Of a stretch of DNA of 64,000 nt, positions 3,370 through 39,834 are shown in pieces. The DNA is from Squalus acanthias (taxonomy: Eukaryota): contig CM059430.1 in NCBI GenBank assembly GCA_030390025.1, forward strand, positions 33,790,001 to 33,854,000, written 5' to 3'. Position 1 is the first letter of the stretch. Every line of letters begins with the position of its first letter. The position numbers and the translations under genes were made by a program. The notes under the pieces were generated by a model. It worked only from the letters and a program-made list of their open reading frames with translations. It searched no databases and had not been told where the DNA came from.

Positions 3370-3454
3370 TTAATTCAGTCGAAGATTTGGGTTTTTATGA
3401 CTGGCATTTTTCAATCTTTCCTTTCCATCATTTGATATTTTATTCACCAGAATC
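3370..3454 (-). CDS. Exon 12: terminal LRR/cap (ILVNKISNDGKERLKNASHKNPNLRLN*)
   Basis: Long polypyrimidine tract ending ttttag, phase 2 start, NKISNDG LRR motif, TAA at 3372-3370. Confidence 0.85.
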
Positions 3455-6400
3455 CTAAAAGAAAAAAAAGTTAAAGAATTTCAGAAGTGAGAACACAAAA
3501 ACTATGTATTAAAATCCTTGCGTTGGTAAAACTGTCAGACCCCAGAATATTGAAATCAAAGGTCATATTGTAACAGCAATTCCTGCTGTTCCTACTTCCT
3601 CCAGAGGGGGGTGGGGTGCTGCAACCTCTTTAAAAATAACAAAAGGGCCAATTTTGCTCTTGTTGTACTTGGATATGAAGGATGCAGTGAGTGCACAAAG
3701 GAAAATCAGGGGTGGGATCTCACATACATAATGGAGTACACTCAATCTTCCATCCAACTAAAATGCAGTAAGAGAAAGATCTGCACTAATACGACAAGGC
3801 CGAGCGTTATTTCTATTTCCTTTAGAGGTGGGTACTGCAACTTCTTTCAGTCTGTTACAACAAGCACAGCTAAAAGATATACCATTTCCTCTAACTCACT
3901 GCGAGCAAGGTCATAGGAGCCTGAGCAGTATTATGAAATATCATAACAGTTTAATTATTTTGCTAGATATTTGAGGTGATTCTGAAATTAACAATTTACA
4001 GAATAAATGCATCTTATTGGTTGATACCTAACATTAGCAGATGTTTTCAATACAGGCAGGATTATTACATTGCGATTTTTTTGGCACACTGAAATTAATC
4101 ATTATTTATTTTCAAATAGCACTGATTGGAAAACTTAAATTATTTGCACTGTTAAGTAAGATAAACAGCATACTTACTAATTTCTTACACTTTCCCTTTT
4201 AAATCAGTGGCATTTTACATAAGGAACGTTTTATTCTTAATAATACAAAAGTCAAATTGGTATGACATGGACATGTGCTAGTTTTACTTCCTTTAGAGGT
4301 GAGTTCACAGAACCTGTGATCAGACACACGAGACTGACGTTTTAGAGTTGAAATCTACTCACTAAAAAAAATGCACCTTTCCAATAAAAAGACTGCCTTG
4401 TGTATATGATCGTAATGTACCAATAAATTCTAAATAAACAACTTTTTAAACACATGTACAATTAAAACAAAATTCTTACCACAACTCTTCAAGTGTGCCA
4501 TTCACTTCTAAAGCACTTCTAAAGTAATCACTCCCCTTTTCAGTGATATCATTGTCTCCAAGTCTGCAAACAAGTATTGTCCATTTTATTACGCAGCTAC
4601 CAACACAGTACAGGTAACATGTAAAATGAAATTCTTTAAATATGAAGGATCTGAATTACAGAATATATATTGAACACGAAACAACGCAACACTTTTGTTT
4701 TAAAGGAGCACTTCTCATAATATACAATGAACAATTACTTCCATTGTTTAACTGAAAATGATATAAAAGTGAAAATGAAAGCGTTAATAGTTTTGGCCAA
4801 GATTAAAGAATAGAGCTTGAAACGTAGCACTTATTCATAAGTTAGTAATTAACTCTTTTAATTAATTAAACTTCTTCACTAAGGACACTCCACAAGGTGA
4901 ACAATGTTAAAACATGCTGAAAAGAGATATTTAAGTTTAATTATAAGAACAGTAATCTATACGCACATGGCTGTATTAGTAACTTAACAGGTTGTCAATA
5001 AAAGTAGTGATTTCCCATCCAAGATAGTTGTGGGATTGAGTGAGTGTAAGAGCTGTCTGCCATTAAAATCTGTCTTTCAAATTAAATTAAATTAAAAATA
5101 AATAAATTGAGAAACCAATTTGAAAGGCTAAGTCCATAGTGCAGGACACTTCCAAGTTGCAAAGAGTAAAAGGGGTGGTGAGGTAAACCAAGAAGTAATA
5201 ATTAGCTGATGCCAAACTTGAATCTTAAAAGGCTGAGGATAGTAAGAGGAAGGACATACTGAATGGATGGTAAGAATCTCCACAGTCTTATGGTCCAGTG
5301 AAGGAATTAATTAGATTGGGAGACTATGTGGTGGGCTTTGATTCTAACACAGTGAGGTCCTGAGTAGGGAAAGAGTGTAAAGAACAGCATATCTGGAGGT
5401 TAGGAGGAACAAGAAAGGAAAATTCAGAGAAACACTGATCATAATAGTATTGATAAAACACAGAGAGAAAAAATAAGTCACAACAGAAATAGATAGAAGA
5501 GGCTTGAGATGAGAAATGGATCGCCTATCAGATGATAAGGAATGAGAGAAAGTTATTAGAAAAGCCTCCCCAAATATGGGAGTAATATTCAAGTGGACTT
5601 GAGGTTTAAAGAGAGTTAAGGATTTTTGAGAGGAGAACAAGTATTTAGCATGAAAGTGGAACCCAAACCTCGTGGAGGCATCCTTAGCAATGGATAAGAT
5701 GTGGGAGTTCCATTTGAGGTCAGAGGAGATATTAAGGCCAGGAATGTTGATAAAAGAGGGCTCTTAGACTGAGGACTTGCAACCTGAAGGAGGTTGATGA
5801 ATAACAGAGTGGAATCATCAGTTGAAGAGTGGATATGATTGGATGATGACTGTAAGGATCATTAATATGAAAAAGGAATTGAGTAGCAGAGAGGATGGAG
5901 CTCTGGAGAACCCCTGCGTTAATGGAAAAAGGAGTCAGACAATAAGCCACCAACTATTGCACATATGGAATGATTTGAGAGGAAGCTATCTAGCCAAAAA
6001 ATTAGCTTTGGTGGGAAGCCATATGATTGTAACTTAGAAGTGCACCTGGTCAAAAGTTTTGGAGATGTCCAGACATGTTGAAAACCATATTGTTAAAGAT
6101 TAGTCTGGAACTTTCAAGATGTGGAGATGCCGGTGTTGGACTGGGGTGGACAAATGTGAGAAGTCGCACAACACCAGGTTATAGTCCAACAGTTTTATTT
6201 GAAATCACAAGCTTTCGGAGTGCTGCTCCTTTGTCAGGTGAAGTGAAGAGCTGTGCCTATATACATCTCTTCACTTCACCTGACGAAGGAGCAGCGCTCC
6301 GAAAGCTTGTGATTTCAGATAAAACTGTTGGACTATAACCTGGTGTTGTGCGACTTCTCACTTTTGGAACTTTCAAAGTAATGGATAATTTGAGAATGAA

Positions 6401-9400
6401 CAACAGCTTATACAGCCTTAGAAAGTACAGCGGTAAAGGCAAGAGGGTAGTACTTGGAAAGATAAGAGTGACTGCTTATCTGAGGAATAGGATGAACACG
6501 AGCAAATTTCCAAGAAGAAAAGGTGAACTGGGAGTAAGAGAAATTGAGATGTCATAGAACAAGGGTGAGTTTGGAGGCACAAGTCTTGAGGGAGATAGGA
6601 GGGATATTATCAGCATCACAAGTCATATTGGAATCCAGAGAGTGGGAGATCCAACAGATCTAGCAGGGGTAACAGAATGGAGCAATGGAGGGAGGTTATT
6701 TACGAGGGTCGTCGAGAGTAGAGTTGGAGGGGAAAAGTGAATCAAAAAGGTCAGCTTTATTTTAGGACAGCTAGCAATAGAATTATGAGGGCAGAAGAGA
6801 GGTGCAAAAGAGGACCTATAGAAGTCACAACTCTGGCAGATAACTGAATCCCTACTTATAACTTTTTTCTTTCATGTGCAGCCACTTAACTTCAATTGTC
6901 TGCATCCTTTTAAATTTACCCAACACACCTTACAAGCTTGCCTGAATGGCTGCTTACATGTAATTTCCTGCTCCACTCTGGATAGCTTCCAATGCCAGGT
7001 CCAGTATCTGCTGGGAGTGTGCCCACACTATGTAAATAAAGCTCACCGCGAAAAATCAGCTAGGCTCAGCAGACCAACAGTCAGGCAAGTGCTAATGCAC
7101 CATTCAATTAACACCTGTTTGTAAAATTTAACTCAAGAGTTCTTATGGAAGTGAGTGTGCCTGGGAGGGGGTGAGATTGGAGACAGTTTTAATATGTGAG
7201 TTTAGATTTAAACCCTTACCTTAATTCAACCAAGCTGCGATTTCTTTTTACTGCTTGTGCCATGTACATTGCGCCTTCATCCCCGATCTTGTTAAATTGT
7301 AAGCTGAATTAGGACAAAGGCGTATATATTAATACAAAAGCAAAATACTGCGGATGCTGGAAATCTGAAATAAAAACAGAAAATGCTGGAAATACTCAGC
7401 AGGTCAGGCAGCATCTGTAGAGAGAGAAACAGAGTTAACGTTTCAGGTCGATGACCCTTCGTCAGAACTGGAAAAAGTTGGAGATGGAACAGGTTTTTAA
7501 GCAAGTGCAGGGGCAGGGAAAGGGAGGAGGGGAGGAAAGAACAAAAGGGAAGGTCTGTGATAGGCTGGAAGGCAGGAGAGATTAAGAGACAAAAGGGATG
7601 ATGGTGCAAGGCAAAAGGAGATGGTAATGGGACAAGTTAAGAAACAAAAGATGACTTTAGATGAAGTGTAAATGGCAATGGCAGAATGAAAGACAGCTGC
7701 CATGTGAGAGAAAAAAAAATAAAAAAAATATAGGGGCAGAGGTTATGGTCTGATATTGTTGAACTCGATGTTGAGTCCAGAAGGCTGTAAAGTGCTTAAT
7801 CGAAAGGTGAAGTGCTGTTCCTCGAGCTTACGTTGAGCTTCACTGGAACAGTGTAAGAGGCCGAGGACGGAGAGATCAGAGTGGGAGTGGAGCGGAGAAT
7901 TAAAGTGACAGGCGACTGGAAACTCAGGGTCACCCTTACAGACTGAACGGAGGTGTTCCGCAAAGCGGTCACCCAATATGCGTTTGGTCTCTCCAATGTA
8001 GAGGAGACTGCATCGTGAGCAGCGAATACAGTATACTAAATTGCAAAAAATACAAGTAAATCGCTGTTTTACCTGGAAGGAGTGTTTGGGGCCCTGAACA
8101 GTGGGAAGGGAGGAGGTAAAAGGGCATGTGTTGCATTTCCTGCGCTTGCACGTGAAGGTGCCGAGCGAAGGGGAAGGGGTGTTGGGGGTGATAGAGGAGT
8201 GAACCAGGGTGTCGCGGAGGGAGCGGTCCCTTCGGAATGCTGAAAGGGGAGGTGAGGGGAAGATGTGTTTGGTGGTGGGATCACGCTGGAGGTGGCGGAA
8301 ATGGCGGAGGATGATCCGTTGAATGTGGAGGCTGGTGGGGTGAAAGGTGAGGACAAGGGGATCCTTATCGTGGTTCTGGGAAGGAGGGGAAGGGGTGAGA
8401 GCAGAAGTGCGGGAAATAGAACGGACACGGTCAAGGGCCGTGTCAACCACAGTAGAGGGGAATCCTCGGTTGAGGAAAAAGGAAGACATGTTGGAAGCAC
8501 TAGTATGGAAGATGGCATTGTCAGAGCAGATGCGGCGGAGATGGAGAAACTGGGAGAATGGAATAGAGTCCTTACAGGAAGTGGGGTGGGAGGAAGTAAA
8601 GTCCAGGTAGATGTGGGAGTCAGTGGGCTTATAGTGAATGTTTGTCAATAGCCTATCCCCAGAGATGGAGGCAGAGAAGTCGAGGAAGGGAAGGGAAGAG
8701 TCGGAGATGGACCATGTGAAGGTGAGGGAAGGGTAGAAATTGGAAGCAAAGTGAATGAAAATTTCTAGTTCAGAGCGAGAGCAGGAAATGGCACCGATAC
8801 AGTCATCAATGTACCGGTAAAAGAGGTGAGGGAGGGGACCCTAGTAGGACTGGAACAAAGAATGTTTTTACGTATATAGTAATGCTCTTCTAGCTCCAAA
8901 ATGACTCTGTTGATTAATATATTGAGCTGTGTGGAGCTGAGTCACACAGACCGGCAAGTTCCCAGGTTCAATCTTCAATCTGTGCTAAGTTAGCTGATTT
9001 GACTTTAGGTGGTGGAAGGGGTGTTACAGTTGGCTTCAGTGCCCATAGGTGAAAGAGGGAAAAGGAAAAACAGCCAGGCTTTCTCTCTAGATTTCAAACT
9101 AGTGACTCCTGCTGTGCAGTCACTGGATGAGGACAGCATCAGGCTCAGCTACACTTGTGATACCCTTTTGTTTGAAAAGCCTGCTACAACAACTTGTATT
9201 TATATAGTGCCTTTAACATAGCAAAACGTCCCAAGCCACTTCACAGGAGAGTTATAAAACAAAATTTGAAACTGAACCACATAAGGAGATATTAGAGCAG
9301 GTGACCAAAAGCTTGGTCAAAGAGGTAGGTTTTAAGGAGCGTCTTAAAGGAGGAAAGAGAGGAAGAGATGCAGAGAGGTTTAGGGAGGGAATTCCAGAGC

Positions 9401-12400
9401 TTAGGGCTTGGCAGCTGAAGGGATGGCCACCAATGGTGGAGTAATTAAAATGCCAGAATTGGAAGAGCGCAGAGATCTCGGAGGGTTAAAGGGCTGGAGA
9501 AGGTTACAGAGATAAGGAGGGGTGAGGCCATGGAAGATTTGAAAACAAGGATGAGAATTTTAAAATCGAGGCATTGCTTCACCAGGAGCCAATGTAGATC
9601 AGCGAACACAGGAGTGATGGGTGAACGGGACTTGGTGCGAGTTAGGACACGGGCAGCAGAGTTTGGATCACCTCAAGTTTACAGAGGGTAGAATGTGGGA
9701 GGCAGGCCAGGAGTGCTAATACTCACTATCTAGACTTGTGCATGAAGAAGCGCACCCATGGAACCATCCTGCAACAGGAAGCAGTGCCTTCAGGAAAGAA
9801 GGGGAGAAAATAGGAAAAAAATAGAAAAGCTGGATTTTCCAGGGATGATGATGCAGTGCTTTGGAGCACCAATGTGCTACGCCATAGATTTTACACCTGC
9901 ATCCTCTCATGTGGTGAGTTTCCATCCTTAGCCATGCCAACTGAAGGCCACAAGAGGAGAGGAAAAGGTCAGAGAAAGAACTACCCAATGTTGCTGTTGC
10001 AATCTTCCTAAAGAGCAGCATTACTGGAAATCTGGAGCAGATAGTTTGTTCACATCTTTTCATCCAGGGATGCTGTGTGGTAAAGGGAGATCACAGAGGG
10101 GGAGGGGAGAAAATAACAAATTCCTTACCAAAAAACACAGCTCCGAAAGACTGATAAAACAATCAACTGAAACATAACTTCCTGTTACATCTGAAATCAT
10201 ATCATTTTTGTAAATTCTAGCGCTTTGGGCTTTTCATGTTTTTTGACATGAATTGCAAAAAATAAAGCAAACATTGAATCAAAACAAAATGAGAATGCCA
10301 ACTCTTGGAATACTTATCCCATACGAAGCTCATGAGCCACTGGGCCCATGAAACTGTCAAGGCATGAAAACCAACCAAAGATGAATAATGCAGGTTGTAA
10401 GCTTGGATTTTACCTGACTACCTTGGTGGGTGGAGGAGCAGAAACTTTATAGAAACTTCCCTCAGAGATGAAATAAATTGAGGAGAATTGGGTAGAGGTC
10501 TTGATAGAGAAAATTGTGTATGTTCTGTGGAAGGAATGGGTTTGATGACCCAAATGGCTTTTCTTGTTCCATGCTCTTGTATGTTTTTATATTCTTACAC
10601 AGGAGAACTTCCAGTGGGTCCTTATGAATATTAAAGGGGCAAGGTTGGCAGAGAAAAGTTTCATGGCTCCAAAATTCCTCGGGTCGCAATCCTGGTGGTA
10701 AGACTGGGATCGCACCGATCATTCCCTCCAGCACTGATCCCACGTGTTTGCAGGCTGAACCAGATGAAATCTTATTTGCATGGGTCAGGTGGGTATAAGG
10801 GCCACCAGGCACATCTTTGGCAACAGCCTCTCCATGCCTGGCAGGAACTCTGGTGCCCGTTTATCCTTGGGGGAAGAGGTTGCTCAGGCATCCACCCTCC
10901 CCCCACCCCTGAACCTGGCAGTAGTCCTATATATAGATAAGGAAGCCAATCTGACCCCACCAGTGGGGTCCACATTAACCCTTGTGGAAGCCAGTATGCC
11001 TCCACTCTGCATACCAGCTGCCACCAATATACCGGGTCACACTGGAACTCCTGGCTTAGGGTGGCCCACCAATGCCTCTGTCCCTGGCTGTCATTTGCTT
11101 TGCAGGGAGTTCTGTCCCTTACAAGGCATTGAGGAAATGGCGGTGACTCAGCACAACTCGCAAGGAGTTTCGGGTCATATTTATAAACAAATCTAAGGCA
11201 CAATGCTCTCATTAAACATTTGGGGATGTAATTGTGTCTCTAGTTACAGCTGGGTGATACAAGTTTATTTTTTTGATTTTAGTTTTACTGAAAAACACAA
11301 ATAATAAAATGCACAAGTTGAAATGTTAAGACTTCAGCATGTATAGCACAGGCTGCAACGAGAGGTCCTGTTGGTCAATATGAGGAGCCACGATGGGGTT
11401 TACAAAGCAAGCCACAAACAGTGCTGCCCTGAAATTCTGTAATATGGCAAAGTATTACACAAAAAAGAATAATTCAGGGGAAAAAAAAACATACCCGACA
11501 ACTCTCAATGTTGTGTTGATCTCCAGAGCTTCAGCCATTGAACGGGCACCTTTGGCTCTGACAGCATTTGCTCTTAATCTAGTGAATACAAAGTGATCTC
11601 GTTAAAATAAGGGAACTAACATCATAGCCATCACGACGGCAGTGTAGCTAAATCAATTGATTGATAAATTCTCCTGAAAGTTTGACAAGTATTCTAATTA
11701 ACCAGGTTTAATACACACCCCAATGTTTTCAGACTGCTGTTTGTTTTCAAAGCTTCAGCTATTTGCGCTGCTCCTTTCTCCCCTATGGAGTTGTGCTTCA
11801 ACCTGTGAAGATTCCAGACATTCGGTTAATCTATTATTTGTACCATATGTCTGGACTTTAAATTAGTGATATCCAAATATTATATACAAATTATAGCATA
11901 TGATTTAATGATAATTGAGTTGGAAATATTCCCGATTAGCCTAATTTTCAGCATTGCATGGCATAATGGGAATTATTTACTGCATTAAAAAAATTAATAG
12001 GCAGACTGAATAGCAAGAAGTTATTTTCATGTGCTAAGCAGAGTTTATTGCACAGTGTGTTATTGTAGAATATATTACCCTGCTTGTCACTAGAACCAAC
12101 CATGTGTGCAAATAACATTTCAAATCATTTTTACTGTTGATAAACAAGATTATTTAAACCAACTAAAAATAGAATGATGCAATATATGTGAAAAATAAAC
12201 TAGACAACTCACATACCCCGTCCCCCATCATCAAAATCAGTTTTTTTTTAAAATTCATTCATGGGATGTGAGCATCACTGGCAAGGCCAGCATTTATTGC
12301 CCATCCCTGTTTGCCCTTGGTGGTGGTGAACCGCCTTCTTGAACCGCTGCAGTCCGTGTGGTGAAGGTACTCCCACAGTGCTGTTAGGGAGGGAGTTCCA

Positions 12401-15400
12401 GGATTTTGACCCAGCGACGATGAAGGAACGCCGATATATTTCCAAGTCTGCAGTGTGTGACTTGGAGGGTAACTTGGAGGTGGTGGAGTATCCTTGGGCC
12501 TGCTGCCCTTGTCCTTCTAGGTGGAAGAGGTCGCGGGTTTGGGAGGTGCTGCCGAAGAAGCCTTGGTGAGTTGCTGCAGTGCATCTTGTAGATGGTACAC
12601 ACTGCAGCCACGGTACGCTGGTGGTGGAGGGAGTGAATGTTTAAGGTGGTGGATGGGGTGCCAATCAAGTGGGCTGCCTTGTCCTGGATGGTGTCGAGTT
12701 TTTTGAGTGTTGTTGGAGCTGCACTCATCCAGGCAAGTGGAGAGTATTCCATCACACTCCTTACTTGTGCCTTGTAGATGGTGAAATGCTTTGGGGAGTC
12801 AGGAGGTGAGACACTCACCGCAGAATACCCAGCCTCTGACCTGCTCTTGTTGCCACAGTATTTATGTGGCTGATCCAGTTAAGTTTCTGGTCAATGGTTA
12901 CACAGAATCATGATTGACTTTGCCATCCTGTGGAGTTCATTAACCTGTCCTTGCACATTCATGGATTTTTTTTCAAAACGATCTTCTTTAAACAGTGAAT
13001 GTTGATGATACTGTCAGGAAACTGGCTTGGAAAAGTTACCTTGTTGGACTATGTGTGGGAGCATAAATAATATATACACAATCGACATGGTATAATAATC
13101 ACTGAAACACCCAGAATTCATTATGACATTTCTGCTAATTCACATCTTTTGCGCCAGTAATTTCAATGAGTCCTCTGAATTTCCATTATGCCATCAGCAT
13201 GCAGTATTTAAACCAAATATTCCCCCCAAAATTAATAAAATAGACAGAAAATGACATTAATCATAATTTTTTAACAGTTTGATCTTTAAAATGGTCCCAG
13301 TAAGATACAATTTCCAGGTTTCTATAAAGTACAAATGTTAGGAATCAAAAATCACACTGTTATGAGGTAACAGTTGTAGGAAAGACCTCATAATCACTAC
13401 TGAATGTCACTCTTAAGCTGTGAAATTTTAAATTCTAAAAAATATATTTTTTAATGAACCTTCAATTTTTTTTCTCTATATTTTTGTATTTAACCAAAAC
13501 TCATAGTTCATCTTTAATTTAACTACGGTGCCATTAAAATAAAAACAATCTTTATCAATGTGGTGTATAAAAATGGAACAGGCATGGAAATTTTACCTTA
13601 AGATTTCTATTCTGCACATTTTACTTTTGAGTGCATTGGCAAGGATCTCCGCACCTTCATCCTCCAGCATGTTTCCCTCTAAACTGTGAATAAAAATAAA
13701 ACAATAATTATCTTTTCTTTAGCTCTGCCTCTGTGAATGCAGAATGTATTTTTGAACCAAACCAATGAAGTATTCACTTACTGAACTATAATTATTCTAT
13801 TTAAGCTCTGCTAGCATACTCCCACATACTAAAGAGTGTAATTTCTTTCTTCCTGTCTCTTATTAACCAACAACTTGCATTTATATAGCAGCTTTAATGT
13901 AGAAAAATATCCAAAAGCACTTAACAGAGGCACAAAGGAAAACTAGATGCCGAACCAAAGATGGAGATATTCGAGGGATGACCAAAAGCTGGGTCATAGA
14001 AGTGGGTTTTTAGGAGGATGGGGAGCTGGAAAGGCAGAGGGGTTTAGGAACAGAATTCTCGAACATGGGGCCTAGGTGGTTAAAGGCACATCCGCCAATG
14101 GTGGGGTGAAGGGACGGGGATATGCACAAGAAGCTAGAGGAAGAGGAATGGAGTTTTCAGGCAGACATGTAGGAGGTTAGAGAAATCAGAAAGGGTGAGA
14201 CTATGGACGAATTTAAACATAAGGATGAGAATTTTAAATTTAAGGCACTGGGGGAGCAGGAGCCAGTGTAGGTCAGTGAGGACAGATGTGATGGGTGAGT
14301 GGGACTTGGTGCAGGTTAGGATGCAGGCAACAGAGTTTTGTTGAGCTGCAGGTTAATGAATGACGAAGGATGGGAGGCTAGCTAGGAGAACATTGGAATA
14401 GTCGAATCTAGAGATGACATAGGCATGAATGACGGTTTTAGCAGCAGATGGGCTGAGATGGGGTGGAAGTGGATGATGTTAGAGGTGGAAGTAGACAGGA
14501 AATGTCATTTCCCTGGGGACTTCACTGGTCTCCTGGTAGATATACAAAGGGAGACTGGCAGAACCCCCATAAAATTTCAGGGCTTAAATATTTTTCCCAT
14601 GGAGGGAATTTACTTAGTTTTTATTTTTTAATTATATTGAAAGAGTTGCGTTTATATAGCACCTTTCATGAACTCAGGACGTCCCAAAACGCTTTACAGC
14701 CAATTAAGTACTTTTGAGGTGTAGTCACTCTAGTAATGTTGGGAAACGTGGCAGCCAATTTGCGCACAGCAAGCTCCCATAACAGCAATGAGATAACAAC
14801 CAGATAAAGAAAGGCTTGCATTTATATAGTGCACTTCCTGAACTCAGGTCGTCCCTTAGTGCTTTAAATCCAATAAAGTACTTTTGGAGTGTAGTCACTG
14901 TTGTAATGTAGGAAACGTGGCAGCCAACTTGTGCACAGCAAGCTCCCACAAACAACAATGTGATAATGACCAGATAATTTGTTTTAGTGATGTTGGTTGA
15001 GGGATAAATATTGGCTAGGACACCAGGGAGAACGCCCCATCTCTTCTTCGAATAGTGCCATGAGATCTTTTACATCCACCTGAGGGGCCAGACTTGGTTT
15101 AACGTCTCATCCAAAAGGCGGCATCTCTCGACAGTGCTCCATCAGTGCTGCAGTGGAATGCCAGCCCAAATTATGTGCTCAAGTCTCTGGAGTGGTACTC
15201 GAACCCAAGACCTTCTGACTGAGTCACCGCCGACACCATATTGACTGACGAGCACCACTGTACTTGAGAGAGCATCTGAGGCACGACTCAAATTTGCAGT
15301 AATTGGTCATAGTAAATAACTAGTCCTACAACAACTGTATAAGCATTTTAAACTAAAGGCCTTTATGTGGCCTGCTAGCAACTGTATTGGACCATTTTCC

Positions 15401-27400: not shown

Positions 27401-30400
27401 TTGAACTTTCATATGAATTTACTAGAAATGTATGTCAGCATTTCTATTGTAATACCTCTGAATGTTTTCTGAAAAATGTTCAACAATTCTCCCAATTTCA
27501 AAGAACAATCTGAATGACGAAGAAAAACGGGGCCAAAATGAGAATATGGCGCGGCTCACTGTAAGGAACAGATGTTTACACGTGTAGGAACTGGATAATG
27601 TCTGTTCCTTATAATGACCCATCTGTTGTGTGGCTTATTTACACAAATTCAAATCAAGTTTCCCCAAGTGAAAATAAAACAGAATTCCTGCTATATTAGA
27701 ATCAGTAAAATGAAATGCTCCTCGTCATTTACTAGATACCATTCTCCTTTATTATTACTCACCCTTGATGGTCAAACTAACAGCTTTTTGTAGAGGTGTC
27801 TTTAAAGCTTCATGACTAACTTCACAGATGTAATAAGCTCCATCATCTGTTTGGTTGCCTTTGATGATTAGGAATGAAAGCAGATTAAATGTCCCATCTT
27901 GATTTTGTTGAGGTAATCCTGTAACCGCTCTTGATGTGATATCAACTTGGTGTCCACTGTCTTTTGAGCCACTTTTTAACCAAGAGACAGAATGGTTTTC
28001 TGGATAAAAGTTTTTCATTTCACAAACGATGGTTTTATCTTCCCCAGGTTCAATGATAATGTTTACGGTGTTTACTGAAATTGTAGGAGGTGCTACAAAG
28101 GTAAAAGGAATAAGGATAAATATTGTATTCCTTTTATGAGCTTTCTTTATTGATGTCATCTTAAAATGCAACACGCTCATGTTAGCCATTCAAAGGAACA
28201 GGAGTTCAGCAAGCCTCGAGCCTGTTCTGCCATTCAATGAGATCGTGGCTGATCTGTGACCTAACTCCTTATACCCGCCTTTGCCCCATATCCCTTAATA
28301 CCTTTGGTTAACAAAAATCTATCAATCTCAGATTTAAAATTAACAATTGACCTAGCATCAATTGCTGTTTGCGGAAGAGAGTTCCAAACTTCTACCACCC
28401 TGTGCGTGTAGAAGTTTTTCCTAACTTCATTCCTGAAAGGTCTGGCTCTAATATTTAGACTATGCCCCCTCGTCCTAGAATCCCCAACCAGCGGAAATAG
28501 TTTCTCTCTATCTACCCTATCTGTTCCCCTTAATATCTTGAAAATTTCAATCACATCATCCCTTAACCTTCTAAATTCCAGGAAATAAAACCCTAGTTTG
28601 TGTAATCTCTCCTCGTAATTTAACCCTTGGGAGTCCAGGTATCATTCTGGTAAATCTATGCTGCACTCCCTTCAAGGCATCTGGTATTTATTTACAGCAG
28701 AATCTGAAGGGCGATGTTCATTCGTTCAATCGGACTTCAGATCACTTTTAATTTTAGGGTAACATACTCTTTAGATACTACAGTAGTTAGTCACCAGAGA
28801 AGATATTCTGTCCCATCTGTTTAACAGTTCTGATGAAAGGTCATCGACCGGAAATGTTGGCTCGGTTTCTCTCTCCGCAGATGCTGCCTGACTTGCCGAG
28901 TGTTTCCCAGCATTTTCTGTTTCTATTTCAGATTTCCAGTAGTCGCAGTATTTTGTTTCAGTAAGCACTGCACTGGTCGGGAATTTCAATTTCAAAGTTA
29001 AAGCAATGTTCTGGCCTAAACACAATGGAAATTGTGGCAAAGTCAGGAACATTGAATTTCTGGAGGAAAAGGATATTTTGAGCTGTTGACTTATGTCCAC
29101 TGGGACTGAGACTGCATCTGCCCAGTCATTTCAGGGAAGGATCTATAATTAGCTATCAGAGGGAACAGATGTTTCGTCCCAACTGCTTAGGCTGAACATT
29201 AGTTCAGTTTGCTGAGGATAAACAACATTACTCCAACTCACTTTGCCATTCAGTATGTGTGTGTTTTATTTTAATTTGCAAGTGCTGGAAAAGACAGAAA
29301 CAATTACTGCGGATGCGAGCAAGTTTTGCATTGGTATTTTTCACGGATATCGCACTGTTGTAACAGTATCACACAGCTGGACAAATTACCTACTTAGTGA
29401 GTGTTTCATTCCTACAGTTCTATCTGTATCTATAACTATCACTAGTATAGATTAATGCAATTACATAAATTAAATTGGCTGAAAGGACAAACACATTTAT
29501 TTTATTTGAGAAAAGTCTGATGTGGTGACGTTTTTATATCCAACTGACAGCATACTTTGCTGCATTTCTGGCACTTCAGCTGAGTCCAGCCAGTTTCAGA
29601 TTTGATTTGATATCCTCTCCCCTCCTTCTTCAGTACAGTGGCCTATTCTGGAGTGTGCTATTGCTTAATCTGTATGAATGCCCAAAATATACTGGCCTTA
29701 CATTTGATAGAGTCCACAATTAGGGGCCATTTAATTTCTGCTCTGACTTTTATGGTGGTTCTGTGGTCCTTATATTTTACATTCTTCTTCTCTAACATTG
29801 ATTATTATTACTGCTTTAAGTAAGTCCCTTAAAGACACATCATTCATTTGTATCTTTCTCTAATTACCATCGATTCTGCCTTTACAAAGTATTTACAGCA
29901 CAGGAACAGGCCATTCGGCCCAACAGGACCATGCCGGTGTTTATGCTCCACACGAGCCTCCTCCCACCCCACTACATCGAACCCCATCAACATATCCTTC
30001 TATTCCTTTCTCCCTCATGTGTTTATCTAGCTTCCCCTTAAATGTATCTACGCTAGTATCTTCAACCACTCCGTGGTAGCGAGTTCCACATTCTAACCAC
30101 TTTCTGGGAAAAGAAGTTTCTCCTGAATTCCCTATTGGATTTATTAGTGACTATTAGTGAGAAAAGAGCCCGATCCTGTTCAATCTTTCTGGATAGGTAT
30201 AACCTCGCAGTTCTGGTATCATTCTAGGAAATCTTCTTTGCATCTTCTCCAGTGCCTCTATATCCTTTTTAGAATATGGAGACCAGAACTGTTCACAGTA
30301 CTCCAAGTGTGGTCTAACCAAGGTTCTATACAAGATTAACATAACTTCGCTGCTTTTCAGTTCTATCCCTCTAGAAATAAACCCCAGTGCTTTGTTTGCT

Positions 30401-33400: not shown

Positions 33401-36400
33401 CAGCAAAGTGATGGAAGGTGTCGTCGACAATGCTATCAAGCGGCACTTACTCACCAATAACCTGCTCACCGATGCTTAGTTTGGATTCCGGCAGGACCAC
33501 TTGGCTCCCGACCTCATTACAGCCTTGGTCCAAACATGGACTAAAGAGCTGAATTCCAGAAGTGAGATGAAAGTGACTTCCCTTGACTTCAAGGCAACAT
33601 TCGACCGAGTGTGGCACCAAGGAGCCCTCGTAAAATGGGAATCAGGGAGAAAACTCTTCACTGGCTGGAGTCATATCTAGCACAAAGGAAGGTGGTTGTT
33701 GGCGGCCTATCATCTCAGCCCCAGGACGTCGCTGCAGGAGTTCCTCAGGGCAGTGTCCTAGGCCCAACCATCTTCAGCTCCTTCATCAATAACCTTCCCT
33801 CCATTATAAGGTCAGAAGTGGGGATGTTCGCTGATGACTGCAAAGTGTTCAGTTCCATTCACAACTCCTCAGATAATTAAGCAGTCCATGCCTGAATATA
33901 GCAAGACCTGGATGGCATTCAGGCTTGGGCTGATAAGTGGCAAGTAACATTCGTGCCAGGCAATGACTATCGCCAACAAGCTAAAGTCTAACCACTGCCC
34001 CTTGACATTCAACAACATTACCATCGCCAAATCCCTCAACATCCATCCAGAGGCTGGGTATTCTGCGGCGAGTGTCTCACCTCCTGACTCCCCAAAGCCT
34101 TTCCACCATCTACAAGGCACAAGTCAGCAGTGTGATGGAATACTCTCCACTTGCCTGGATGAGTGCAGCTCCAACAACACTCAAGAAGCTTGACCCCATC
34201 CAGGACAAAGCAGTCCGCTTGATTGGCACCCCATCCACTACCTTAAACATTCACTCCCTCCACCACCAGCGTACCGTGGCTGCAGTGTGTACCATCTACA
34301 AGATGCACTGCAGCAACTCGCCAAGGCTTCTTCGACAGCACCTCCAAAACCCGCGACCTCTACCACCTAGAAGGACAAGGGCAGCAGATGCATGGGAGCA
34401 CCACCACCTGCAAGTTCCCCTCCAAGTCACACACCATCCTGACTTGGAAATATATCACCGTTCCTTCATCGTCACTGGGTCAAAATCCTGGAACTCCCTC
34501 ACTAACAGCACCTTCACCACACGGACTGCAGCGGTTCAAGAAGGCGACTCCCCACCACCTTCTCAAGGGCAATTAGGGATGGGCAATAAATGCTGGCCTT
34601 GCCTGCAACGCCCACATCACAGGAACAAAAAATAAATAAAAAATTCCCACACTCACCTGTTACTGACAGGGTAACTCGCCCCGTTGCTTTATCAGAAAAT
34701 ATTGTAACTGTGCAGGAGTATGATCCAATGTCATGAATAGTAACATTTTTTAGGAGTAAAGAAGCATTTGCTTTGCTTATTTCATTTAAAAAGAGACTTG
34801 ATCCTGGTCTATAGCTTTCATATTCTCCAAAGTCGAACACACATACTGCTTTTTCATCATCTCCCACTCTGTGGTTCCATTCAATCACAACGTATCTCAA
34901 ATCAAGCTCAACGGTGTGAGAAAATAAGCAGCCTAGCAGGACATCTTCACCAATTGTGGCACTGAACACAGCTGGGCTGACCACCACTTCCAGGGTAGCT
35001 GCATAAAAAAAAATACATATATAAGGAAATAGGTTCTAAACATAGGTAATAAATCATGAATTGAAATACATTTTTTATTTAGTAAAACTCCACAGGGGAG
35101 AAATACAATTCATGGCCATCATTTTAGCGGCCAAGAGTTGCAAAATGCGGGGGGGCACCTTGGCCACCCCATTGGTGCCCAAGGCCGACCTGATGCCGTA
35201 TTCAGATGGGCCTGTAAATGGTGGAGCAGCCTGCCCACCTGAAACAGGCATCAGGCTGCTTTGCTACACAAATCAGGGCCCGACGCCGGTTGTAGGACGG
35301 CGATGCAAAATTCAGGTACAAATGGGTGGAGCTTGCACTGTGCAAGTTGTGCCGGGTCGTGAGAGGCCTAACCAATGGTCCTTAAACAGACCGCTCAGAA
35401 AAAGGCCACAAAATAATGGTTCCTTCCTATGTCCAGATTTCAAGTGAGCTACACAATACTGCACAACTGCAATTTCGGCATTTGAATGGGAATATCAGCA
35501 GCTTCTCCCATCTGGAGAAACACTAGGGGGGTGATTTTGCCAGCCCTGGGGAGGCGGGTATGGAGGCGGGACGGCCGGGAAAATGGCAGAATCTGGGAGC
35601 AGGTACCCATCCCGCCCTCAACCCGCCTCCGTGCCATCTTCCCAGGAGGCGGGTACCCGACCTGCGCTGGGAGCCGCCTCAAGGCGGGAAGGGGATTAGT
35701 GGCAATTAACTGCCTGTTAACAGGCAGTTTTTTTTGATAATCCCTATTTTGCGACCTAAAGTGTGGGCTTCCTGACGGCTCCGAACCTCGCCAGGGTCAG
35801 CGAGGTGAGCCGTGGGTCTGCAGGGGTCGGAGGGGCCGAAAAGTGCGCTGTGCAGGTGAGTGATGAGTGCAAGTGTGGAGAGGTAAGTGTGTGAGGTGAG
35901 TGTAGAGTGTTTTAATAAGATTACTTACCTTTGCTTCTTCCTCCAGGCTTCATCTCTTTAGGCTGCGGAGCTGCCTCATCTCACCGGCAGAGAAAGCAGA
36001 ATGGCCGCTGCATTCTTAAATGCAGCAGCCTTCTGCTTTCTGCTCAGGAAAGCTTTCTAAGTGAGTCTTCAGTAAAGGACTCAACTTAGAAGACAGATTG
36101 TCAGTGTTTGACAGCTTCACAGAGCTGTCAAACGATGACAATTCATCTGTCAAAAAATCTTGACAGATGAAACGTCATACGCTGACGTTCTCTGTCACCG
36201 GCTTTCCCTTAATTGGCCTGCTAAGCCCGCTGGGCGGGCTTAACAAGATCAATCAAGGGAAAATAGTGTGGGTTGGCCGGACGTCGATGGAGACGGGACT
36301 AAAACCAGACAAGCAGCAGTCCCGCCTCCATCACGTCCCCATTGATAAAATCACCCCCATGATCTCCCTAACATTAGAGAGATCCCACACTTGGCAGGAA

Positions 36401-39400: not shown

Positions 39401-39582
39401 TTCCACCTCCCTGGTATATAGGCCTACTTTACAGCAAACCCTTTACTGCCCTTAAATTAAAAAAGAAATTGACTTCCTTATCGGGAGTGACAGAGACGGA
39501 AAACAAATTTTAAAGGAAATCCCCACTTACCTGCTAAAGAGACAAGGTAAACGATCATCAATTCTACTAGAAAGCAGTTCAT
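3370..39582 (-). CDS. Predicted 12-exon Ig-domain/NLR chimeric gene (SP-IgV-IgC1-IgC1-like-CARD-NACHT-LRR), about 1261 aa
   Basis: Exons 39582-39531, 34998-34657, 28092-27763, 25189-24749, 22735-22298, 22096-22079, 17547-15807, 13683-13597, 11578-11495, 7303-7220, 4563-4480, 3454-3370. All introns are GT-AG with compatible phases (1,1,1,1,1,1,2,2,2,2,2); total 3786 nt with no internal stop. That the Ig and NLR halves form one transcript is inferred. Confidence 0.75.
4480..4563 (-). CDS. Exon 11: RI-type LRR (LGDNDITEKGSDYFRSALEVNGTLEELW)
   Basis: 84 nt, phase 2-2, ttgcag acceptor, gtaaga donor. Confidence 0.92.
5100..6800 (-). mobile_element. Heavily decayed non-LTR retrotransposon (RT remnant)
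   Basis: ORF 5732..5953 INAGVLQSSILSATQFLFHIND resembles the RT motif GVPQGSILSPTLF...IND; boundaries approximate. Confidence 0.65.
6118..6364. mobile_element. Palindromic Penelope-terminus-like insertion with 12-bp target site duplication
   Basis: Inverted arms 6156-6250 and 6267-6361; tggaactttcaa duplicated at 6106-6117 and 6365-6376; hammerhead-like core at 6280-6304. Confidence 0.8.
7220..7303 (-). CDS. Exon 10: RI-type LRR (LQFNKIGDEGAMYMAQAVKRNRSLVELR)
   Basis: 84 nt, phase 2-2, ttcag acceptor, AAG|gtaagg donor; NxIGDEGA consensus. Confidence 0.93.
7335..8868 (-). mobile_element. Penelope-like element, 5'-truncated (RT thumb plus GIY-YIG endonuclease)
   Basis: ORF 7743..8648: YKPTDSH.YL...SSHP, NLVYCIRC..C.LLYIGETKR.L..RF.EH, LQPSGLN. 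Confidence 0.92.
8925..9800 (+). mobile_element. tRNA/Deu-domain-type SINE split by an L2 fragment
   Basis: Head with ggttcaatc B-box at about 8965; body resumes after 9715. Confidence 0.5.
9186..9715 (-). mobile_element. L2-clade LINE 3' fragment
   Basis: Same tail (acaacttgtatttatatag..cctttaac) and body as the RT-coding copy at 40183-41215. Confidence 0.85.
11495..11578 (-). CDS. Exon 9: RI-type LRR (LRANAVRAKGARSMAEALEINTTLRVVG)
   Basis: 84 nt, phase 2-2, GT-AG; typical NOD LRR exon size. Confidence 0.92.
12250..12900 (-). mobile_element. CR1/L2-group LINE 3' fragment (same family as 31802-34642)
   Basis: ORF 12384..12818 [17 protein letters not shown]... Confidence 0.88.
13597..13683 (-). 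CDS. Exon 8: RI-type LRR (LEGNMLEDEGAEILANALKSKMCRIEILR)
   Basis: 87 nt, phase 2-2, GT-AG; translated by hand, not in the ORF track. Confidence 0.92.
13868..14500 (-). mobile_element. Older L2-clade LINE 3' fragment
   Basis: Diverged similarity to 9186-9715 and 40183-41215. Confidence 0.7.
14640..15240 (-). mobile_element. tRNA-derived SINE with L2-like tail and duplicated 3' part
   Basis: Homologous to 21372-21828 and 37128-37515; segments 14645-14805 and 14815-14980 form a tandem duplication. Confidence 0.8.
15807..17547 (-). CDS. Exon 7: NACHT NTPase, HD1/WH/HD2 and first LRRs (NOD1/NOD2/NLRC3-like)
   Basis: ORF 15800..17623: Walker A GVAGIGKS, Walker B ILFLFDGLDE, sensor-1 VLITSRP, EILGF, LCYVPAFC, winged-helix FFHLTHQEFFAALY. 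1741 nt, phase 1-2. Confidence 0.96.
18115..19502 (+). mobile_element. Possible solo LTR or other unclassified repeat
   Basis: Internal short repeats (gagttacagcaagaagt, gaaggcagtt), TATA-like motif at about 18810, AATAAA at about 19390, ends in CA; no TSD found, so boundaries are uncertain. Confidence 0.35.
19581..19870. mobile_element. Tc1/mariner (Tigger-like) MITE
   Basis: Terminal inverted repeats cagttaactctt / aagagtttactg flanked by TA on both sides. Confidence 0.8.
20154..20929. mobile_element. GC/CpG-rich non-autonomous DNA transposon
   Basis: Imperfect TIRs tagggggaaaaattca / caatttttaccctcta; abrupt rise in GC; internal palindromes. Confidence 0.7.
21372..21828 (-). mobile_element. 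tRNA-derived SINE with L2-like tail
   Basis: tRNA-like head at about 21760-21828 (gtggattcaagtcccactc on the minus strand); L2-type tail at 21372. Confidence 0.85.
22079..22096 (-). CDS. Exon 6: candidate 18-nt microexon (VSLFDR)
   Basis: tgtttcag|TTTCCTTATTTGACAGAG|gtgagt; frame-preserving, phase 1-1; the ORF also works without it. Confidence 0.5.
22298..22735 (-). CDS. Exon 5: CARD (death-fold) domain plus linker
   Basis: ORF 22233..22769: RRTVVNYI..ILPLLNLLMEKKIISEDDH...KGRTLLDILSHRGQQLCAHFFNVL, matching the CARD pattern R.LLD....G...C..F...L. Acceptor taacag, donor AAG|gtaagc, 438 nt, phase 1-1. Confidence 0.88.
23214..23362. mobile_element. Small MITE-like element
   Basis: Imperfect inverted ends gcctggaatttctgcagggttctc / gagaaccccacagaatttcagggc. 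Confidence 0.55.
24177..24607 (-). mobile_element. Full-length HE1-type SINE
   Basis: tRNA head with A box tggcatagtgg and B box ggttcgaatcc; CR1/HER1-type tail. Confidence 0.88.
24749..25189 (-). CDS. Exon 4: atypical C1-set Ig domain (insertion, second Cys missing)
   Basis: ORF 24717..25217: LSLACAVLWFKPKAIRVSWY...GTYSLISQL...YSFEVQHDSL. 441 nt, phase 1-1, GT-AG. Confidence 0.88.
26740..26772 (+). repeat. Poly-G tract
   Basis: Direct reading. Confidence 0.9.
27763..28092 (-). CDS. Exon 3: C1-set Ig domain (tapasin/B7-H6/SIRP-like)
   Basis: ORF 27755..28189: IVCEMKNFYPENHSVSWL...NQDGTFNLLS...YYICEVSHEAL (CxxxxFYP and YxCxVxH motifs). 330 nt, phase 1-1, GT-AG. Confidence 0.93.
28195..28680 (-). 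mobile_element. CR1/HER1 LINE 3' fragment
   Basis: ORF 28261..28554 ...RTRGHSL...RVVEVWNSLP. Confidence 0.9.
28825..28957 (+). mobile_element. Penelope terminal fragment with hammerhead-like core
   Basis: Matches the reverse complement of 7335-7470. Confidence 0.8.
29895..30545 (-). mobile_element. CR1 LINE 3' fragment
   Basis: ORF 30154..30504 [18 protein letters not shown]. Confidence 0.9.
31802..34642 (+). mobile_element. Long decayed LINE (APE-RT remnants) with a tRNA-like 5' head
   Basis: Fragments [45 protein letters not shown]; A-rich tail at 34625-34642. Confidence 0.9.
34657..34998 (-). CDS. Exon 2: V-set Ig domain, B7/butyrophilin/NCR3LG1-like
   Basis: ORF 34514..34987: GEDVLLGC...VIEW...NASLLLKNVTIHDIGSYSCTV, with both Cys, the Trp and DxGxYxC. 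Acceptor tgcag, donor CAG|gtgagt, 342 nt, phase 1-1. Confidence 0.92.
35526..36358. mobile_element. Non-autonomous DNA transposon with TIRs
   Basis: gggggtgatttt / aaaatcaccccc inverted termini; internal hairpin at about 36096-36143. Confidence 0.7.
36505..36881. mobile_element. MITE-like element
   Basis: Imperfect TIRs ggccccgatattt / aatatcgaggcc. Confidence 0.55.
37128..37515 (-). mobile_element. SINE with L2-like tail, 5'-truncated
   Basis: Homologous to 21372-21750. Confidence 0.82.
37692..38480 (-). mobile_element. Penelope-like element 3' fragment (GIY-YIG)
   Basis: ORF 38094..38423 LLYIGETKRRLGDRFAEH...LQPSGLN. Confidence 0.9.
39515..39524 (-). promoter_or_regulatory. NF-kB consensus site GGGGATTTCC at the start of intron 1
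   Basis: Matches GGGRNNYYCC and follows directly after the gtaagt donor of exon 1. Confidence 0.45.
39531..39582 (-). CDS. Exon 1: signal-peptide-like leader MNCFLVELMIVYLVSLA
   Basis: ATG at 39582, 17 mostly hydrophobic codons plus 1 nt, strong donor CAG|gtaagt; phase 1, as expected for an Ig-superfamily leader exon. Confidence 0.75.
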
Positions 39583-39812: not shown

Positions 39813-39834
39813 AAAGTGAAAGTGAAAGTGAAAG
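39813..39834. promoter_or_regulatory. Tandem IRF-E/ISRE motif AAAGTGAAAGTGAAAGTGAAAG
   Basis: Three AAGTGA hexamers (overlapping GAAAnnGAAA) about 230 bp upstream of the Ig-NLR ATG. Confidence 0.65.

What the first reader, a model, noticed from the sequence alone, without database searches (positions are those of the whole stretch)
3370..39582. Chimeric immune gene: B7-H6/tapasin-like Ig domains fused in frame to a complete CARD-NACHT-LRR receptor
Seen in sequence: 12 exons with canonical splice sites join into one ORF of about 1261 aa, SP-IgV-IgC1-IgC1-like-CARD-NACHT-LRR. The last Ig exon (phase-1 donor at 24749) is only about 2 kb from the CARD exon (phase-1 acceptor at 22735). That gap holds SINE/MITE sequence, and I found no transmembrane exon, terminal exon or separate first exon in it. 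Walker A/B, sensor-1 and the winged-helix His are intact. Established: vertebrate NLRs normally begin with CARD, PYD, BIR or FISNA domains and are cytosolic, while V+C1 modules belong to lumenal or surface B7/tapasin-family proteins. I know of no described vertebrate NLR with N-terminal V/C1 Ig domains. Inference: exon shuffling via phase-1 introns produced an Ig-sensor NLR, analogous to plant integrated-domain NLRs, linking a jawed-vertebrate C1-set module to NOD-type signalling.
Basis: partly seen in the sequence, partly recalled or inferred. Interest (0 to 1): 0.95.

Follow-up and report, generated by a model that had tools for sequence, protein, structure and literature searches.

The report
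Shark B7H6 fused to membrane NLR

Summary
The fused reading frame is real, but it was described incompletely. On the minus strand I find 13 GT-AG exons, not 12, totalling 3957 coding bases (1319 codons, not 1261). The predicted protein is therefore a type I membrane protein. Signal peptide, IgV and IgC1 lie outside. A disulfide-less C1-like Ig domain, CARD, NACHT and LRR lie in the cytosol. That removes the "topology paradox".

The architecture is colinear with proteins from 17 named elasmobranch species. Most are RefSeq models called NLRC3-like or NOD1-like. One is an author-deposited nurse-shark protein named B7H6 (QTT61908.1, 1318 aa). CARD-skipping isoforms exist. No methionine in the CARD exon is conserved, which argues against a separate CARD-first gene.

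Ten searches of the open paper library found no description of a vertebrate Ig-TM-NLR. The three shark B7H6/NKp30 papers I asked for by id were not held.

Verdict: a real, conserved gene and an ortholog of a deposited family. Its mechanism is only inferred.

The parts
39818..39833 (+). ISRE/IRF-like repeat GAAAGTGAAAGTGAAA, 236-251 bases upstream of the ATG
   Evidence: the pattern GAAANNGAAANNGAAA has 2 matches in 64 kb against 0.02 expected. Sequence read. Function not tested; the ISRE naming is recalled.
39531..39582 (-). Leader exon, coding part: ATG at 39582, 17 codons plus 1 base (MNCFLVELMIVYLVSLA), donor G|GTAAGT, phase 1
   Evidence: The hydrophobic N-terminus is conserved in 11 of 12 orthologs.
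34657..34998 (-). IgV exon, 342 bases, phase 1-1
   Evidence: splice sites. V-set 3.2e-8; nearest solved chains are CD276/B7-H3 at 6.8e-14 and NCR3LG1 at 1.5e-6.
27763..28092 (-). IgC1 exon, 330 bases, phase 1-1
   Evidence: splice sites. C1-set 1.2e-12; the nearest non-antibody chain is NCR3LG1/B7-H6 at 5.3e-16.
25780..25890 (-).
   Evidence: local tblastn with the Narcine protein P0121, E 0.002, 40% identity; acceptor TATAG|GT, donor AAAG|GTAAAT. Kyte-Doolittle 2.30. Present in all 12 aligned orthologs.
24749..25189 (-). Third Ig exon (C1-derived, cytosolic by topology), 441 bases, phase 1-1. The F-strand Cys is replaced by Phe and there is a charged insertion.
   Evidence: aligns to the C-kappa B-C and E-F-G strands; only one conserved Cys; best match is a 1168-aa Ig-NLR at 9.5e-37.
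22298..22735 (-). CARD exon, 438 bases, symmetric phase 1-1; a cassette exon skipped in some ortholog isoforms
   Evidence: CARD 4.8e-9. (splice sites). ICEBERG 7.2e-6, NOD1 CARD 1e-3. P0121 and P0198 lack it.
15807..17547 (-). NACHT-HD-WH exon, 1741 bases, phase 1 in and phase 2 out
   Evidence: NACHT 2.5e-31, NLRC4_HD2 1.1e-11. NLRP3 4.8e-40, rabbit NOD2 entry 3e-29. Boundaries. 78-94% identity to orthologs.
13600..13683 (-). LRR exon 1, 84 bases, phase 2-2
11719..11802 (-). LRR exon 2, 84 bases
11495..11578 (-). LRR exon 3, 84 bases
7220..7303 (-). LRR exon 4, 84 bases
   Evidence: LRR_6 5.7e-4, below Pfam's cut-off for this 27-residue piece alone.
4480..4563 (-). LRR exon 5, 84 bases
3370..3454 (-). 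Last coding exon (...NPNLRLN) with stop TAA at 3372-3370

Best explanation
The window holds one intact 13-exon gene of about 36 kb on the minus strand. It is the ortholog of the elasmobranch gene deposited for nurse shark as B7H6 (NCR3LG1) and modelled in RefSeq as 'NLRC3-like' or 'NOD1-like'. It encodes a 1319-codon type I membrane protein. The order is: cleavable leader; a B7-type IgV plus IgC1 ectodomain; one transmembrane helix; then, in the cytosol, a C1-derived Ig domain that has lost its disulfide; a CARD on a skippable cassette exon; an NLRP3-like NACHT-helical-winged-helix ATPase with Walker A, Walker B and sensor motifs in place; and about six ribonuclease-inhibitor-type LRRs. Shown here: the exons, phases, domain content, colinearity and conservation across sharks and rays. 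Inferred: the topology (from hydrophobicity and the leader) and the mechanism. The mechanism I commit to is a membrane-tethered NLR in which ATP-driven NACHT oligomerisation is physically coupled to a B7-H6-type ectodomain. The coupling could run either way. Cytosolic danger sensing could cluster the NK-cell ligand on the surface (inside-out). Alternatively, engagement of the ectodomain by an NKp30-family receptor could nucleate CARD signalling in the target cell (outside-in). The CARD-less splice form would act as a modulator. An ISRE-like repeat upstream suggests interferon inducibility.
For: Domains per exon. All splice sites are canonical and the phases are compatible. The Ig3 exon alone, searched against 1.84 billion representatives, has as its best match at 9.5e-37 a 1168-aa Narcine protein with V-set, C1-set, NACHT and LRR. 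That is 1 of 73 hits carrying NACHT. With that protein as query, 14 Ig-NLR proteins from 12 species were returned, of 17 proteins at E<=1e-20; 12 of the 14 have CARD. Cluster look-up gave 33 proteins of 1134-1352 aa in all, bringing five more named species, among them QTT61908.1 'B7H6' of Ginglymostoma cirratum. The twelve window exons after the leader lie end to end on residues 25-1318 of that protein. The TM segment and the leader are the two most hydrophobic 19-residue windows in 11 of 12 orthologs. IgV and IgC1 keep their Cys pairs and IgV keeps two invariant N-glycan sequons, whereas Ig3 keeps one Cys only. No Met column of the CARD exon is conserved (best 9 of 12), while Y-F-P upstream of the window's in-exon Met is invariant. 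Shark-ray identity per domain is 50-81%.
Against: Most orthologs are predictions from one pipeline. I could not see whether QTT61908.1 comes from cDNA. Topology rests on hydrophobicity only. Read-through of the Ig3 donor meets a stop after 10 codons, with two ATTAAA hexamers just beyond, so a short NLR-less isoform is possible. Neither direction of signalling is tested.
Confidence: 0.87

Rival explanations
1. There are two neighbouring genes that prediction pipelines join wrongly. One is a B7H6-like membrane gene (leader, V, C1, TM, Ig3) that ends by read-through and polyadenylation just after the Ig3 exon. The other is a separate CARD-NACHT-LRR gene that starts from its own upstream non-coding exon and the in-exon ATG (MKREDW...).
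For: An in-frame ATG lies 12 codons into the CARD exon. Read-through of the Ig3 donor gives a stop after 10 codons, followed by ATTAAA at 24687-24682 and 24674-24669. I saw no RNA evidence.
Against: That Met is present in only 8 of 12 orthologs and no other CARD-exon Met column exceeds 9 of 12, whereas residues upstream of it (Y, F, P) are invariant. The Ig3 exon is open to its last codon and keeps a consensus donor. Frame compatibility Ig3->CARD->NACHT and Ig3->NACHT is kept in sharks and rays. Isoforms that skip CARD still join Ig3 to NACHT (P0121, P0198). An author-deposited nurse-shark protein has the full fusion.
Confidence: 0.07
2. One reading: a secreted or lumenal Ig-sensor NLR without any membrane anchor, working like a plant integrated-domain NLR.
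For: No credible TM exon lies in the 24748-22736 gap. The only hydrophobic open frame there, at 23408-23283, is at chance level and has a purine-rich acceptor.
Against: A conserved TM exon lies at 25890-25780, between IgC1 and Ig3. An ATPase and a CARD in the secretory lumen would have no known partners (established knowledge of NLRs, recalled).
Confidence: 0.02
3. In this species the gene is a decaying copy or an assembly artefact.
For: Introns are full of repeats, and LINE/SINE-like open frames are seen throughout.
Against: All 13 exons are open, with canonical splice sites. They are 83-94% identical to the sawshark protein and have no frameshift or stop. The same exon order in other species excludes a local misjoin. 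The window has no N.
Confidence: 0.03

Closest known systems
Nurse-shark 'natural killer cell cytotoxicity receptor 3 ligand (B7H6)', QTT61908.1 / UniRef A0A8A9WQJ7, and the RefSeq 'NLRC3-like / NOD1-like' models of sharks and rays
   Same: Same order: leader, IgV, IgC1, TM, Ig3, CARD, NACHT, LRR. The window exons after the leader lie end to end on residues 25-1318. Pfam content is the same. Lengths are 1289-1352 aa for full forms, against 1319 codons here.
   Different: A different species. Per-exon identity to nurse shark is 61-96%. The closest is the sawshark Pristiophorus japonicus at 83-94%. The RefSeq names hide the Ig part and the B7H6 name hides the NLR part.
Mammalian and reptile B7-H6 (NCR3LG1) and other B7 proteins (CD276/B7-H3, PD-L1)
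   Same: A leader-IgV-IgC1-TM layout encoded by phase-1 exons. These are the nearest named relatives of the ectodomain (turtle NCR3LG1 6.5e-30).
   Different: Known B7-H6 proteins have a short cytoplasmic tail without CARD, NACHT or LRR (recalled). The two turtle NCR3LG1 proteins listed carry Ig Pfam families only. Binding to NKp30 was not tested here.
Cytosolic vertebrate NLRs: NLRP3, NOD1/NOD2, NLRC3
   Same: NACHT with helical and winged-helix parts (NLRP3 4.8e-40, rabbit NOD2 entry 3e-29). CARD nearest ICEBERG and NOD1. 84-base LRR exons.
   Different: Only 31-34% identity to the best 120 ordinary NLRs listed, none of which carries Ig Pfam families. Here the NLR sits behind a signal peptide, an Ig ectodomain and a TM helix, and the CARD is internal.
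Sea-cucumber AjNLRC4 and AjNLR-new (membrane Ig-TM-NACHT receptors); TM-containing NLRs of sponges
   Same: Ig domains, a membrane span and a NACHT in one protein. AjNLRC4 is reported with extracellular Ig and intracellular NACHT (PMC8699970, passages read; PMC13133943). Sponge TM-NLRs are mentioned in PMC12909245.
   Different: AjNLRC4 lacks CARD and LRR and has two predicted TM segments. I had no sequences to compare, so independent origin is my inference. The Ig part there is not of the B7 V-C1 type as far as the passages say.

Membership tests
NLR (NACHT-LRR) family | NACHT NTPase domain with P-loop and Walker B | tested here: met
   Pfam NACHT 2.5e-31 plus NLRC4_HD2. GVAGIGKS and LFLFDGLDE read and invariant in orthologs. 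The motif names are recalled.
NLR (NACHT-LRR) family | C-terminal leucine-rich repeats | tested here: met
   Five 84-base exons with the LxxNxIgdxGa pattern. They are 73-100% identical to the LRR part of orthologs, which score LRR_6 at 8.4e-11 to 2.7e-14. Alone, only 1 of 5 window exons reached E<1.
NLR (NACHT-LRR) family | Death-fold effector domain (CARD or PYD) before the NACHT | tested here: met
   CARD 4.8e-9. It is internal and on a cassette exon, not N-terminal.
NLR (NACHT-LRR) family | Soluble cytosolic protein (typical, not strictly defining) | tested here: not met
   A leader and one TM helix are predicted by hydrophobicity and conserved. No experimental topology.
B7 family / B7-H6 (NCR3LG1) | Leader, IgV, IgC, TM, each on its own phase-1 exon | tested here: met
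B7 family / B7-H6 (NCR3LG1) | Sequence nearest to named B7-H6 rather than to other Ig families | tested here: inconclusive
   For IgC1 the best non-antibody chain is NCR3LG1 (5.3e-16). For IgV the best is CD276 (6.8e-14), with NCR3LG1 at 1.5e-6. Turtle NCR3LG1 scores 6.5e-30. The nurse-shark ortholog was named B7H6 by its depositors. No tree was built.
B7 family / B7-H6 (NCR3LG1) | Binds NKp30 (NCR3) | not testable with these tools
   Needs a binding assay.
   IgV-IgC1 are separated from the NLR by a TM helix. Only the degenerate Ig3 is on the NLR side.
Echinoderm membrane Ig-NACHT receptors (AjNLRC4 type) | Extracellular Ig, TM, intracellular NACHT; no CARD, no LRR | tested here: not met
   The layout is shared, but CARD and LRR are present here (paper passages). 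Homology was not tested because no sequence was held.

The most novel reading that the evidence does not exclude
Elasmobranch B7H6 is a true membrane-spanning NLR, and it may be the first in a vertebrate whose nature has not been set out in print. It ties an NK-cell ligand to an inflammasome-type switch. NACHT oligomerisation on cytosolic danger would array the B7-H6 ectodomain for NKp30-family receptors, or NKp30 engagement would nucleate CARD signalling and death in the target cell. An unchecked note from this scan reports a second Ig-TM-NACHT-LRR gene elsewhere in the same genome. If that holds, membrane NLRs would be a small family in sharks.
Probability: 0.3. Interest if true: 0.9.

Novelty: new member of a known kind. 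Interest (0 to 1): 0.62.

Why it matters
In the paper passages I read, vertebrate NLRs are described as intracellular, with five N-terminal effector classes and no membrane-spanning class. Here a complete CARD-NACHT-LRR is the cytoplasmic part of a B7-H6-type surface protein. The arrangement is kept in both sharks and rays, so it is old and under constraint.

If the two halves work together, it would link NK-cell or T-cell recognition of 'induced self' directly to an oligomerising danger switch. It would also bear on how B7-H6 and its variable cytoplasmic tail arose.

The database names (NLRC3-like, NOD1-like, B7H6, even PLEKHF1 for the basking-shark model) each hide half of the protein, so NLR and B7 surveys may both miss it. 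The gene is directly testable by topology mapping, NKp30-family binding and CARD partner assays.

Tried and rejected
I looked for a TM or terminal exon in the Ig3-CARD gap. The hydrophobicity scan of 24748-17700 gave 11 windows at Kyte-Doolittle >=1.8, which is chance level. Two lie in the gap. The better one, at 23408-23283, has only a purine-rich phase-1 acceptor, so I rejected it.

The NACHT exon as query in the word-indexed protein search gave only 31-34% identical ordinary NLRs, because the true orthologs exceed the length limit of 1.75 times the query. The Ig3 exon as query in the same tool, whose length limits admit only candidates of about 80-255 aa, found nothing, so no short transcript-derived fragment was recovered.

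Local tblastn of the 120 ordinary NLRs outside the gene gave only weak repeat-related hits at 54.7-60.4 kb. ORFs of 110 aa or more in 40-64 kb look like transposon remnants. I did not find POP4 or PLEKHF1 in the window, and I had no reference sequence for them.

Single LRR exons are too short for Pfam: 1 of 5 reached E<1.

None returned a paper on a vertebrate Ig-TM-NLR or on B7H6 with NACHT. Three papers were not held when I asked by id: Flajnik et al. 2012 and Ohta & Flajnik 2015, both cited in reference lists that I read, and Kinlein et al. 2021, first recalled and then confirmed in a reference list. They may describe the nurse-shark gene. I did not ask for supplements. The whale-shark paper's NLR list (its Supplementary file 12, named) may contain this gene, possibly among its 'three NOD1'. 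That is unverified.

The runs found cannot be interpreted. Eight are 'RNA?' guesses holding 0.29-0.37 of the sampled words, and the three exons in that stretch make up 0.28 of it, but repeats could give the same share.

I never joined the window's exons into one protein, either for a search or in a script. Exons were searched one by one, and natural full-length orthologs returned by the tools stood in for the whole.
Full report
**What is in the sequence.**
The gene lies on the minus strand. Pfam scans of the five long open frames gave:
- V-set, 3.2e-8
- C1-set, 1.2e-12
- a partial C1-set, 3.3e-6, over residues 18-52 only
- CARD, 4.8e-9
- NACHT, 2.5e-31, with NLRC4_HD2 at 1.1e-11

The third Ig exon ends AAAG|GTGAGT, with its last base at 24749. 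The CARD exon begins after ACAG, at 22735. Both are phase 1.

The other boundaries:
- The leader starts at ATG 39582 and ends G|GTAAGT.
- IgV is 34998-34657.
- IgC1 is 28092-27763.
- The NACHT exon runs 17547-15807.
- Five 84-base LRR exons and a last exon follow, ending in TAA at 3372-3370.
- All introns are GT-AG.
- The window contains no N.

I searched the Ig3 exon alone against 1.84 billion representative proteins. It gave 73 hits at E<=0.001. One stood far above the rest: P0121, at 9.5e-37, 1168 aa, matched at residues 284-424.

P0121 is XP_069757801.1, 'NLRC3-like isoform X4' of the electric ray Narcine bancroftii. It carries V-set, C1-set, NACHT and LRR. Between IgC1 and Ig3 its sequence shows a hydrophobic stretch.

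Local tblastn of P0121 on the window found the matching exon. Read, it is TATAG|GT...AAAG|GTAAAT, at 25890-25780. It is 111 bases, phase 1-1, and encodes (G)SNPRIHSGAFLTIFLTFMITAVVCFGTFIFYNNKRK.

Its best 19-residue Kyte-Doolittle mean is 2.30. In 11 of 12 aligned orthologs the two most hydrophobic windows of the whole protein are the leader and this segment, at 1.85-2.63. The twelfth is a Narcine isoform with another N-terminus and has the TM peak only.

The gene therefore has 13 exons. The coding sum is 3957 bases, or 1319 codons.

**One gene or two.**
With P0121 as query, 17 proteins scored E<=1e-20 among 7573 candidates.
- Fourteen are Ig-NLR proteins from 12 elasmobranch species. Twelve of these carry CARD and two do not.
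- One is an ordinary NLRP3-like protein.
- Two are turtle NCR3LG1.

Cluster look-up listed 33 proteins of 1134-1352 aa in all, with many isoforms. It brought five further named species, plus one whose name was cut off in the output. Among them is QTT61908.1, 'natural killer cell cytotoxicity receptor 3 ligand (B7H6)' of the nurse shark, 1318 aa. By its accession type this is an author deposit and not a pipeline model; that reading of the accession is recalled.

Pfam finds V-set, C1-set, CARD, NACHT, NLRC4_HD2 and LRR_6 in it. The twelve window exon translations after the leader map to it in order and abut:

| Exon | Residues in QTT61908.1 |
|---|---|
| IgV | 25-136 |
| IgC1 | 138-246 |
| TM | 248-283 |
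| Ig3 | 284-427 |
| CARD | 429-573 |
| NACHT | 575-1149 |
| five LRR exons and the last exon | 1151-1318 |

Only the split codons lie between them. The window is closest to the sawshark Pristiophorus japonicus, at 91, 90, 83, 90 and 94% for IgV, IgC1, Ig3, CARD and NACHT. The source is therefore probably a squalomorph shark.

**Evidence against an independent CARD-first gene.**
- The in-exon Met of the window (MKREDW) is present in 8 of 12 orthologs.
- No Met column of the CARD exon exceeds 9 of 12.
- Y-F-P upstream of that Met is invariant.
- The CARD exon is symmetric (phase 1-1, 438 bases). Two models skip it exactly and join Ig3 to the NACHT exon: P0121 of Narcine and P0198 of Pristiophorus.
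- Every part is conserved between sharks and rays:

| Part | Shark-ray identity |
|---|---|
| IgV | 72% |
| IgC1 | 70% |
| TM exon | 50% |
| Ig3 | 54% |
| CARD | 63% |
| NACHT | 79% |
| LRR | 81% |

**Evidence that weighs the other way.**
- I saw no RNA.
- None of the 17 runs listed is on record as RNA.
- No short protein fragment across the junction exists in the collection.
- Most orthologs come from one prediction pipeline.
- That RefSeq isoforms imply transcript support is my recollection of how that pipeline works, not something I tested.
- Read-through of the Ig3 donor would end after 10 codons, with two ATTAAA hexamers just beyond. A short NLR-less isoform is therefore conceivable alongside the long one.

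**Topology and domains.**
- With a leader and a single TM helix, IgV and IgC1 face outward or into the lumen. Ig3, CARD, NACHT and LRR face the cytosol.
- IgV and IgC1 keep their Cys pairs (12/12 and 12/12; 11/12 and 12/12). IgV has two invariant N-x-S/T sequons.
- Ig3 aligns with the B-C and E-F-G strands of antibody C-kappa. It reads Y-S-F-E-V where C-kappa has Y-A-C-E-V and keeps one conserved Cys only. That fits a reducing compartment.
- Its other relatives are unnamed multi-C1 proteins of bichir, frog, lungfish, caecilian, newt, coelacanth and the sawshark. Of the 73 hits, only P0121 has a NACHT.
- The ectodomain is B7-like. For IgV the nearest solved chains are CD276 at 6.8e-14 and NCR3LG1 at 1.5e-6. 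For IgC1 the nearest non-antibody chain is NCR3LG1 at 5.3e-16.
- The NACHT is nearest NLRP3 (4.8e-40), ahead of the NOD2 entry (3e-29). None of the 120 best ordinary NLRs listed is named NOD1 or carries Ig families.
- The CARD is nearest ICEBERG (7.2e-6) and NOD1 CARD (1e-3).

**Regulation.**
GAAAGTGAAAGTGAAA lies 236-251 bases upstream of the ATG. The pattern GAAANNGAAANNGAAA occurs twice in 64 kb against 0.02 expected. The second copy is in intron 2. Reading it as an IRF/ISRE site rests on recall.

**How it most likely works.**
Shown: one conserved gene with this domain order. Inferred: it is a membrane-tethered NLR. The NACHT motifs are intact (GVAGIGKS, LFLFDGLDE, TSRP, FFHLTHQEFF; read, motif names recalled). 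ATP-driven oligomerisation is therefore expected, and it would necessarily bring the ectodomains together.

I favour a coupling of B7-H6-type ligand display with NLR switching, but the evidence does not choose a direction:
- inside-out: danger sensed by LRR/NACHT clusters the ligand for NKp30-family receptors;
- outside-in: receptor engagement nucleates CARD signalling.

CARD skipping would give a signalling-dead or modulating form.

**Comparison with what is known.**
The paper passages I read describe NLRs as intracellular receptors. The whale-shark genome paper, which lists 43 putative NLRs, says so (PMC8455134). A 2026 paper lists five vertebrate subclasses by N-terminal domain (PMC13133943).

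Membrane Ig-TM-NACHT proteins are described in a sea cucumber. They lack CARD and LRR, and the 2021 authors wrote that Ig plus NACHT had not been reported to their knowledge (PMC8699970, passages). TM-bearing NLRs are noted in sponges (PMC12909245, passage).

Ten searches of the open library found no paper on a vertebrate Ig-TM-NLR or on B7H6 together with NACHT or NLR. That library omits most subscription papers, and the three shark B7H6/NKp30 papers I asked for were not held. I therefore cannot say that the fusion is undescribed.

**Verdict.**

The gene is an ortholog of a family already on public record under names that each hide half of it, so I class it as a new member of a known kind. 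It remains of interest because the mechanism is untested and, as far as I could search, not discussed in print.

I worked beside it and sent none of it to any search afterwards.

Noticed in passing
window 24717-24749 and 24669-24687: If the Ig3 donor is not used, the frame runs GELLFKKKKL and stops at 24719-24717. Two ATTAAA hexamers follow at 24687-24682 and 24674-24669. A short membrane isoform (V-C1-TM-Ig3) without the NLR is conceivable. The A-run could also cause internal priming in oligo-dT libraries.
   Followed up: no
window 28914-28929: A second match to GAAANNGAAANNGAAA (GAAATAGAAACAGAAA, minus strand) lies inside intron 2, between the IgV and IgC1 exons.
   Followed up: no
window 23283-23408 (minus strand): An open frame with a hydrophobic stretch followed by basic residues and a stop, in the Ig3-CARD intron. 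The hydrophobicity is at chance level for the region and the only phase-1 acceptor is purine-rich. It could be chance or a relic.
   Followed up: partly
window 7743-8648, 12384-12818, 32000-34650, 40600-41600, 51977-53649, 58450-60496: Long open frames that look like reverse-transcriptase and other transposon remnants fill the introns and the upstream 24 kb. I judged this by reading and did not scan them. Two NLR database proteins (P0021, P0025) hit such repeats at 54.7-60.4 kb, which suggests repeat sequence inside those models.
   Followed up: partly
protein P0238 (Cetorhinus maximus, XP_078400485.1): A 1317-aa basking-shark model with V-set, C1-set, CARD, NACHT and LRR and no PH or FYVE domain is named 'pleckstrin homology domain-containing family F member 1 isoform X1'. 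The locus was probably merged with a neighbouring PLEKHF1 gene.
   Followed up: partly
protein P0204 (Mustelus asterias), alignment A1 columns about 303-336: A 34-residue insert repeats the start of Ig3. It is either a partial exon duplication or a model artefact. Rhincodon P0206 and Heptranchias P0205 each lack one 28-residue LRR that other isoforms have.
   Followed up: no
same genome, another piece (note s1-888606): An unchecked first-reader note reports a second membrane-anchored Ig-NLR (signal peptide-IgV-TM-NACHT-LRR, 977 aa) elsewhere in this genome.
   Followed up: no
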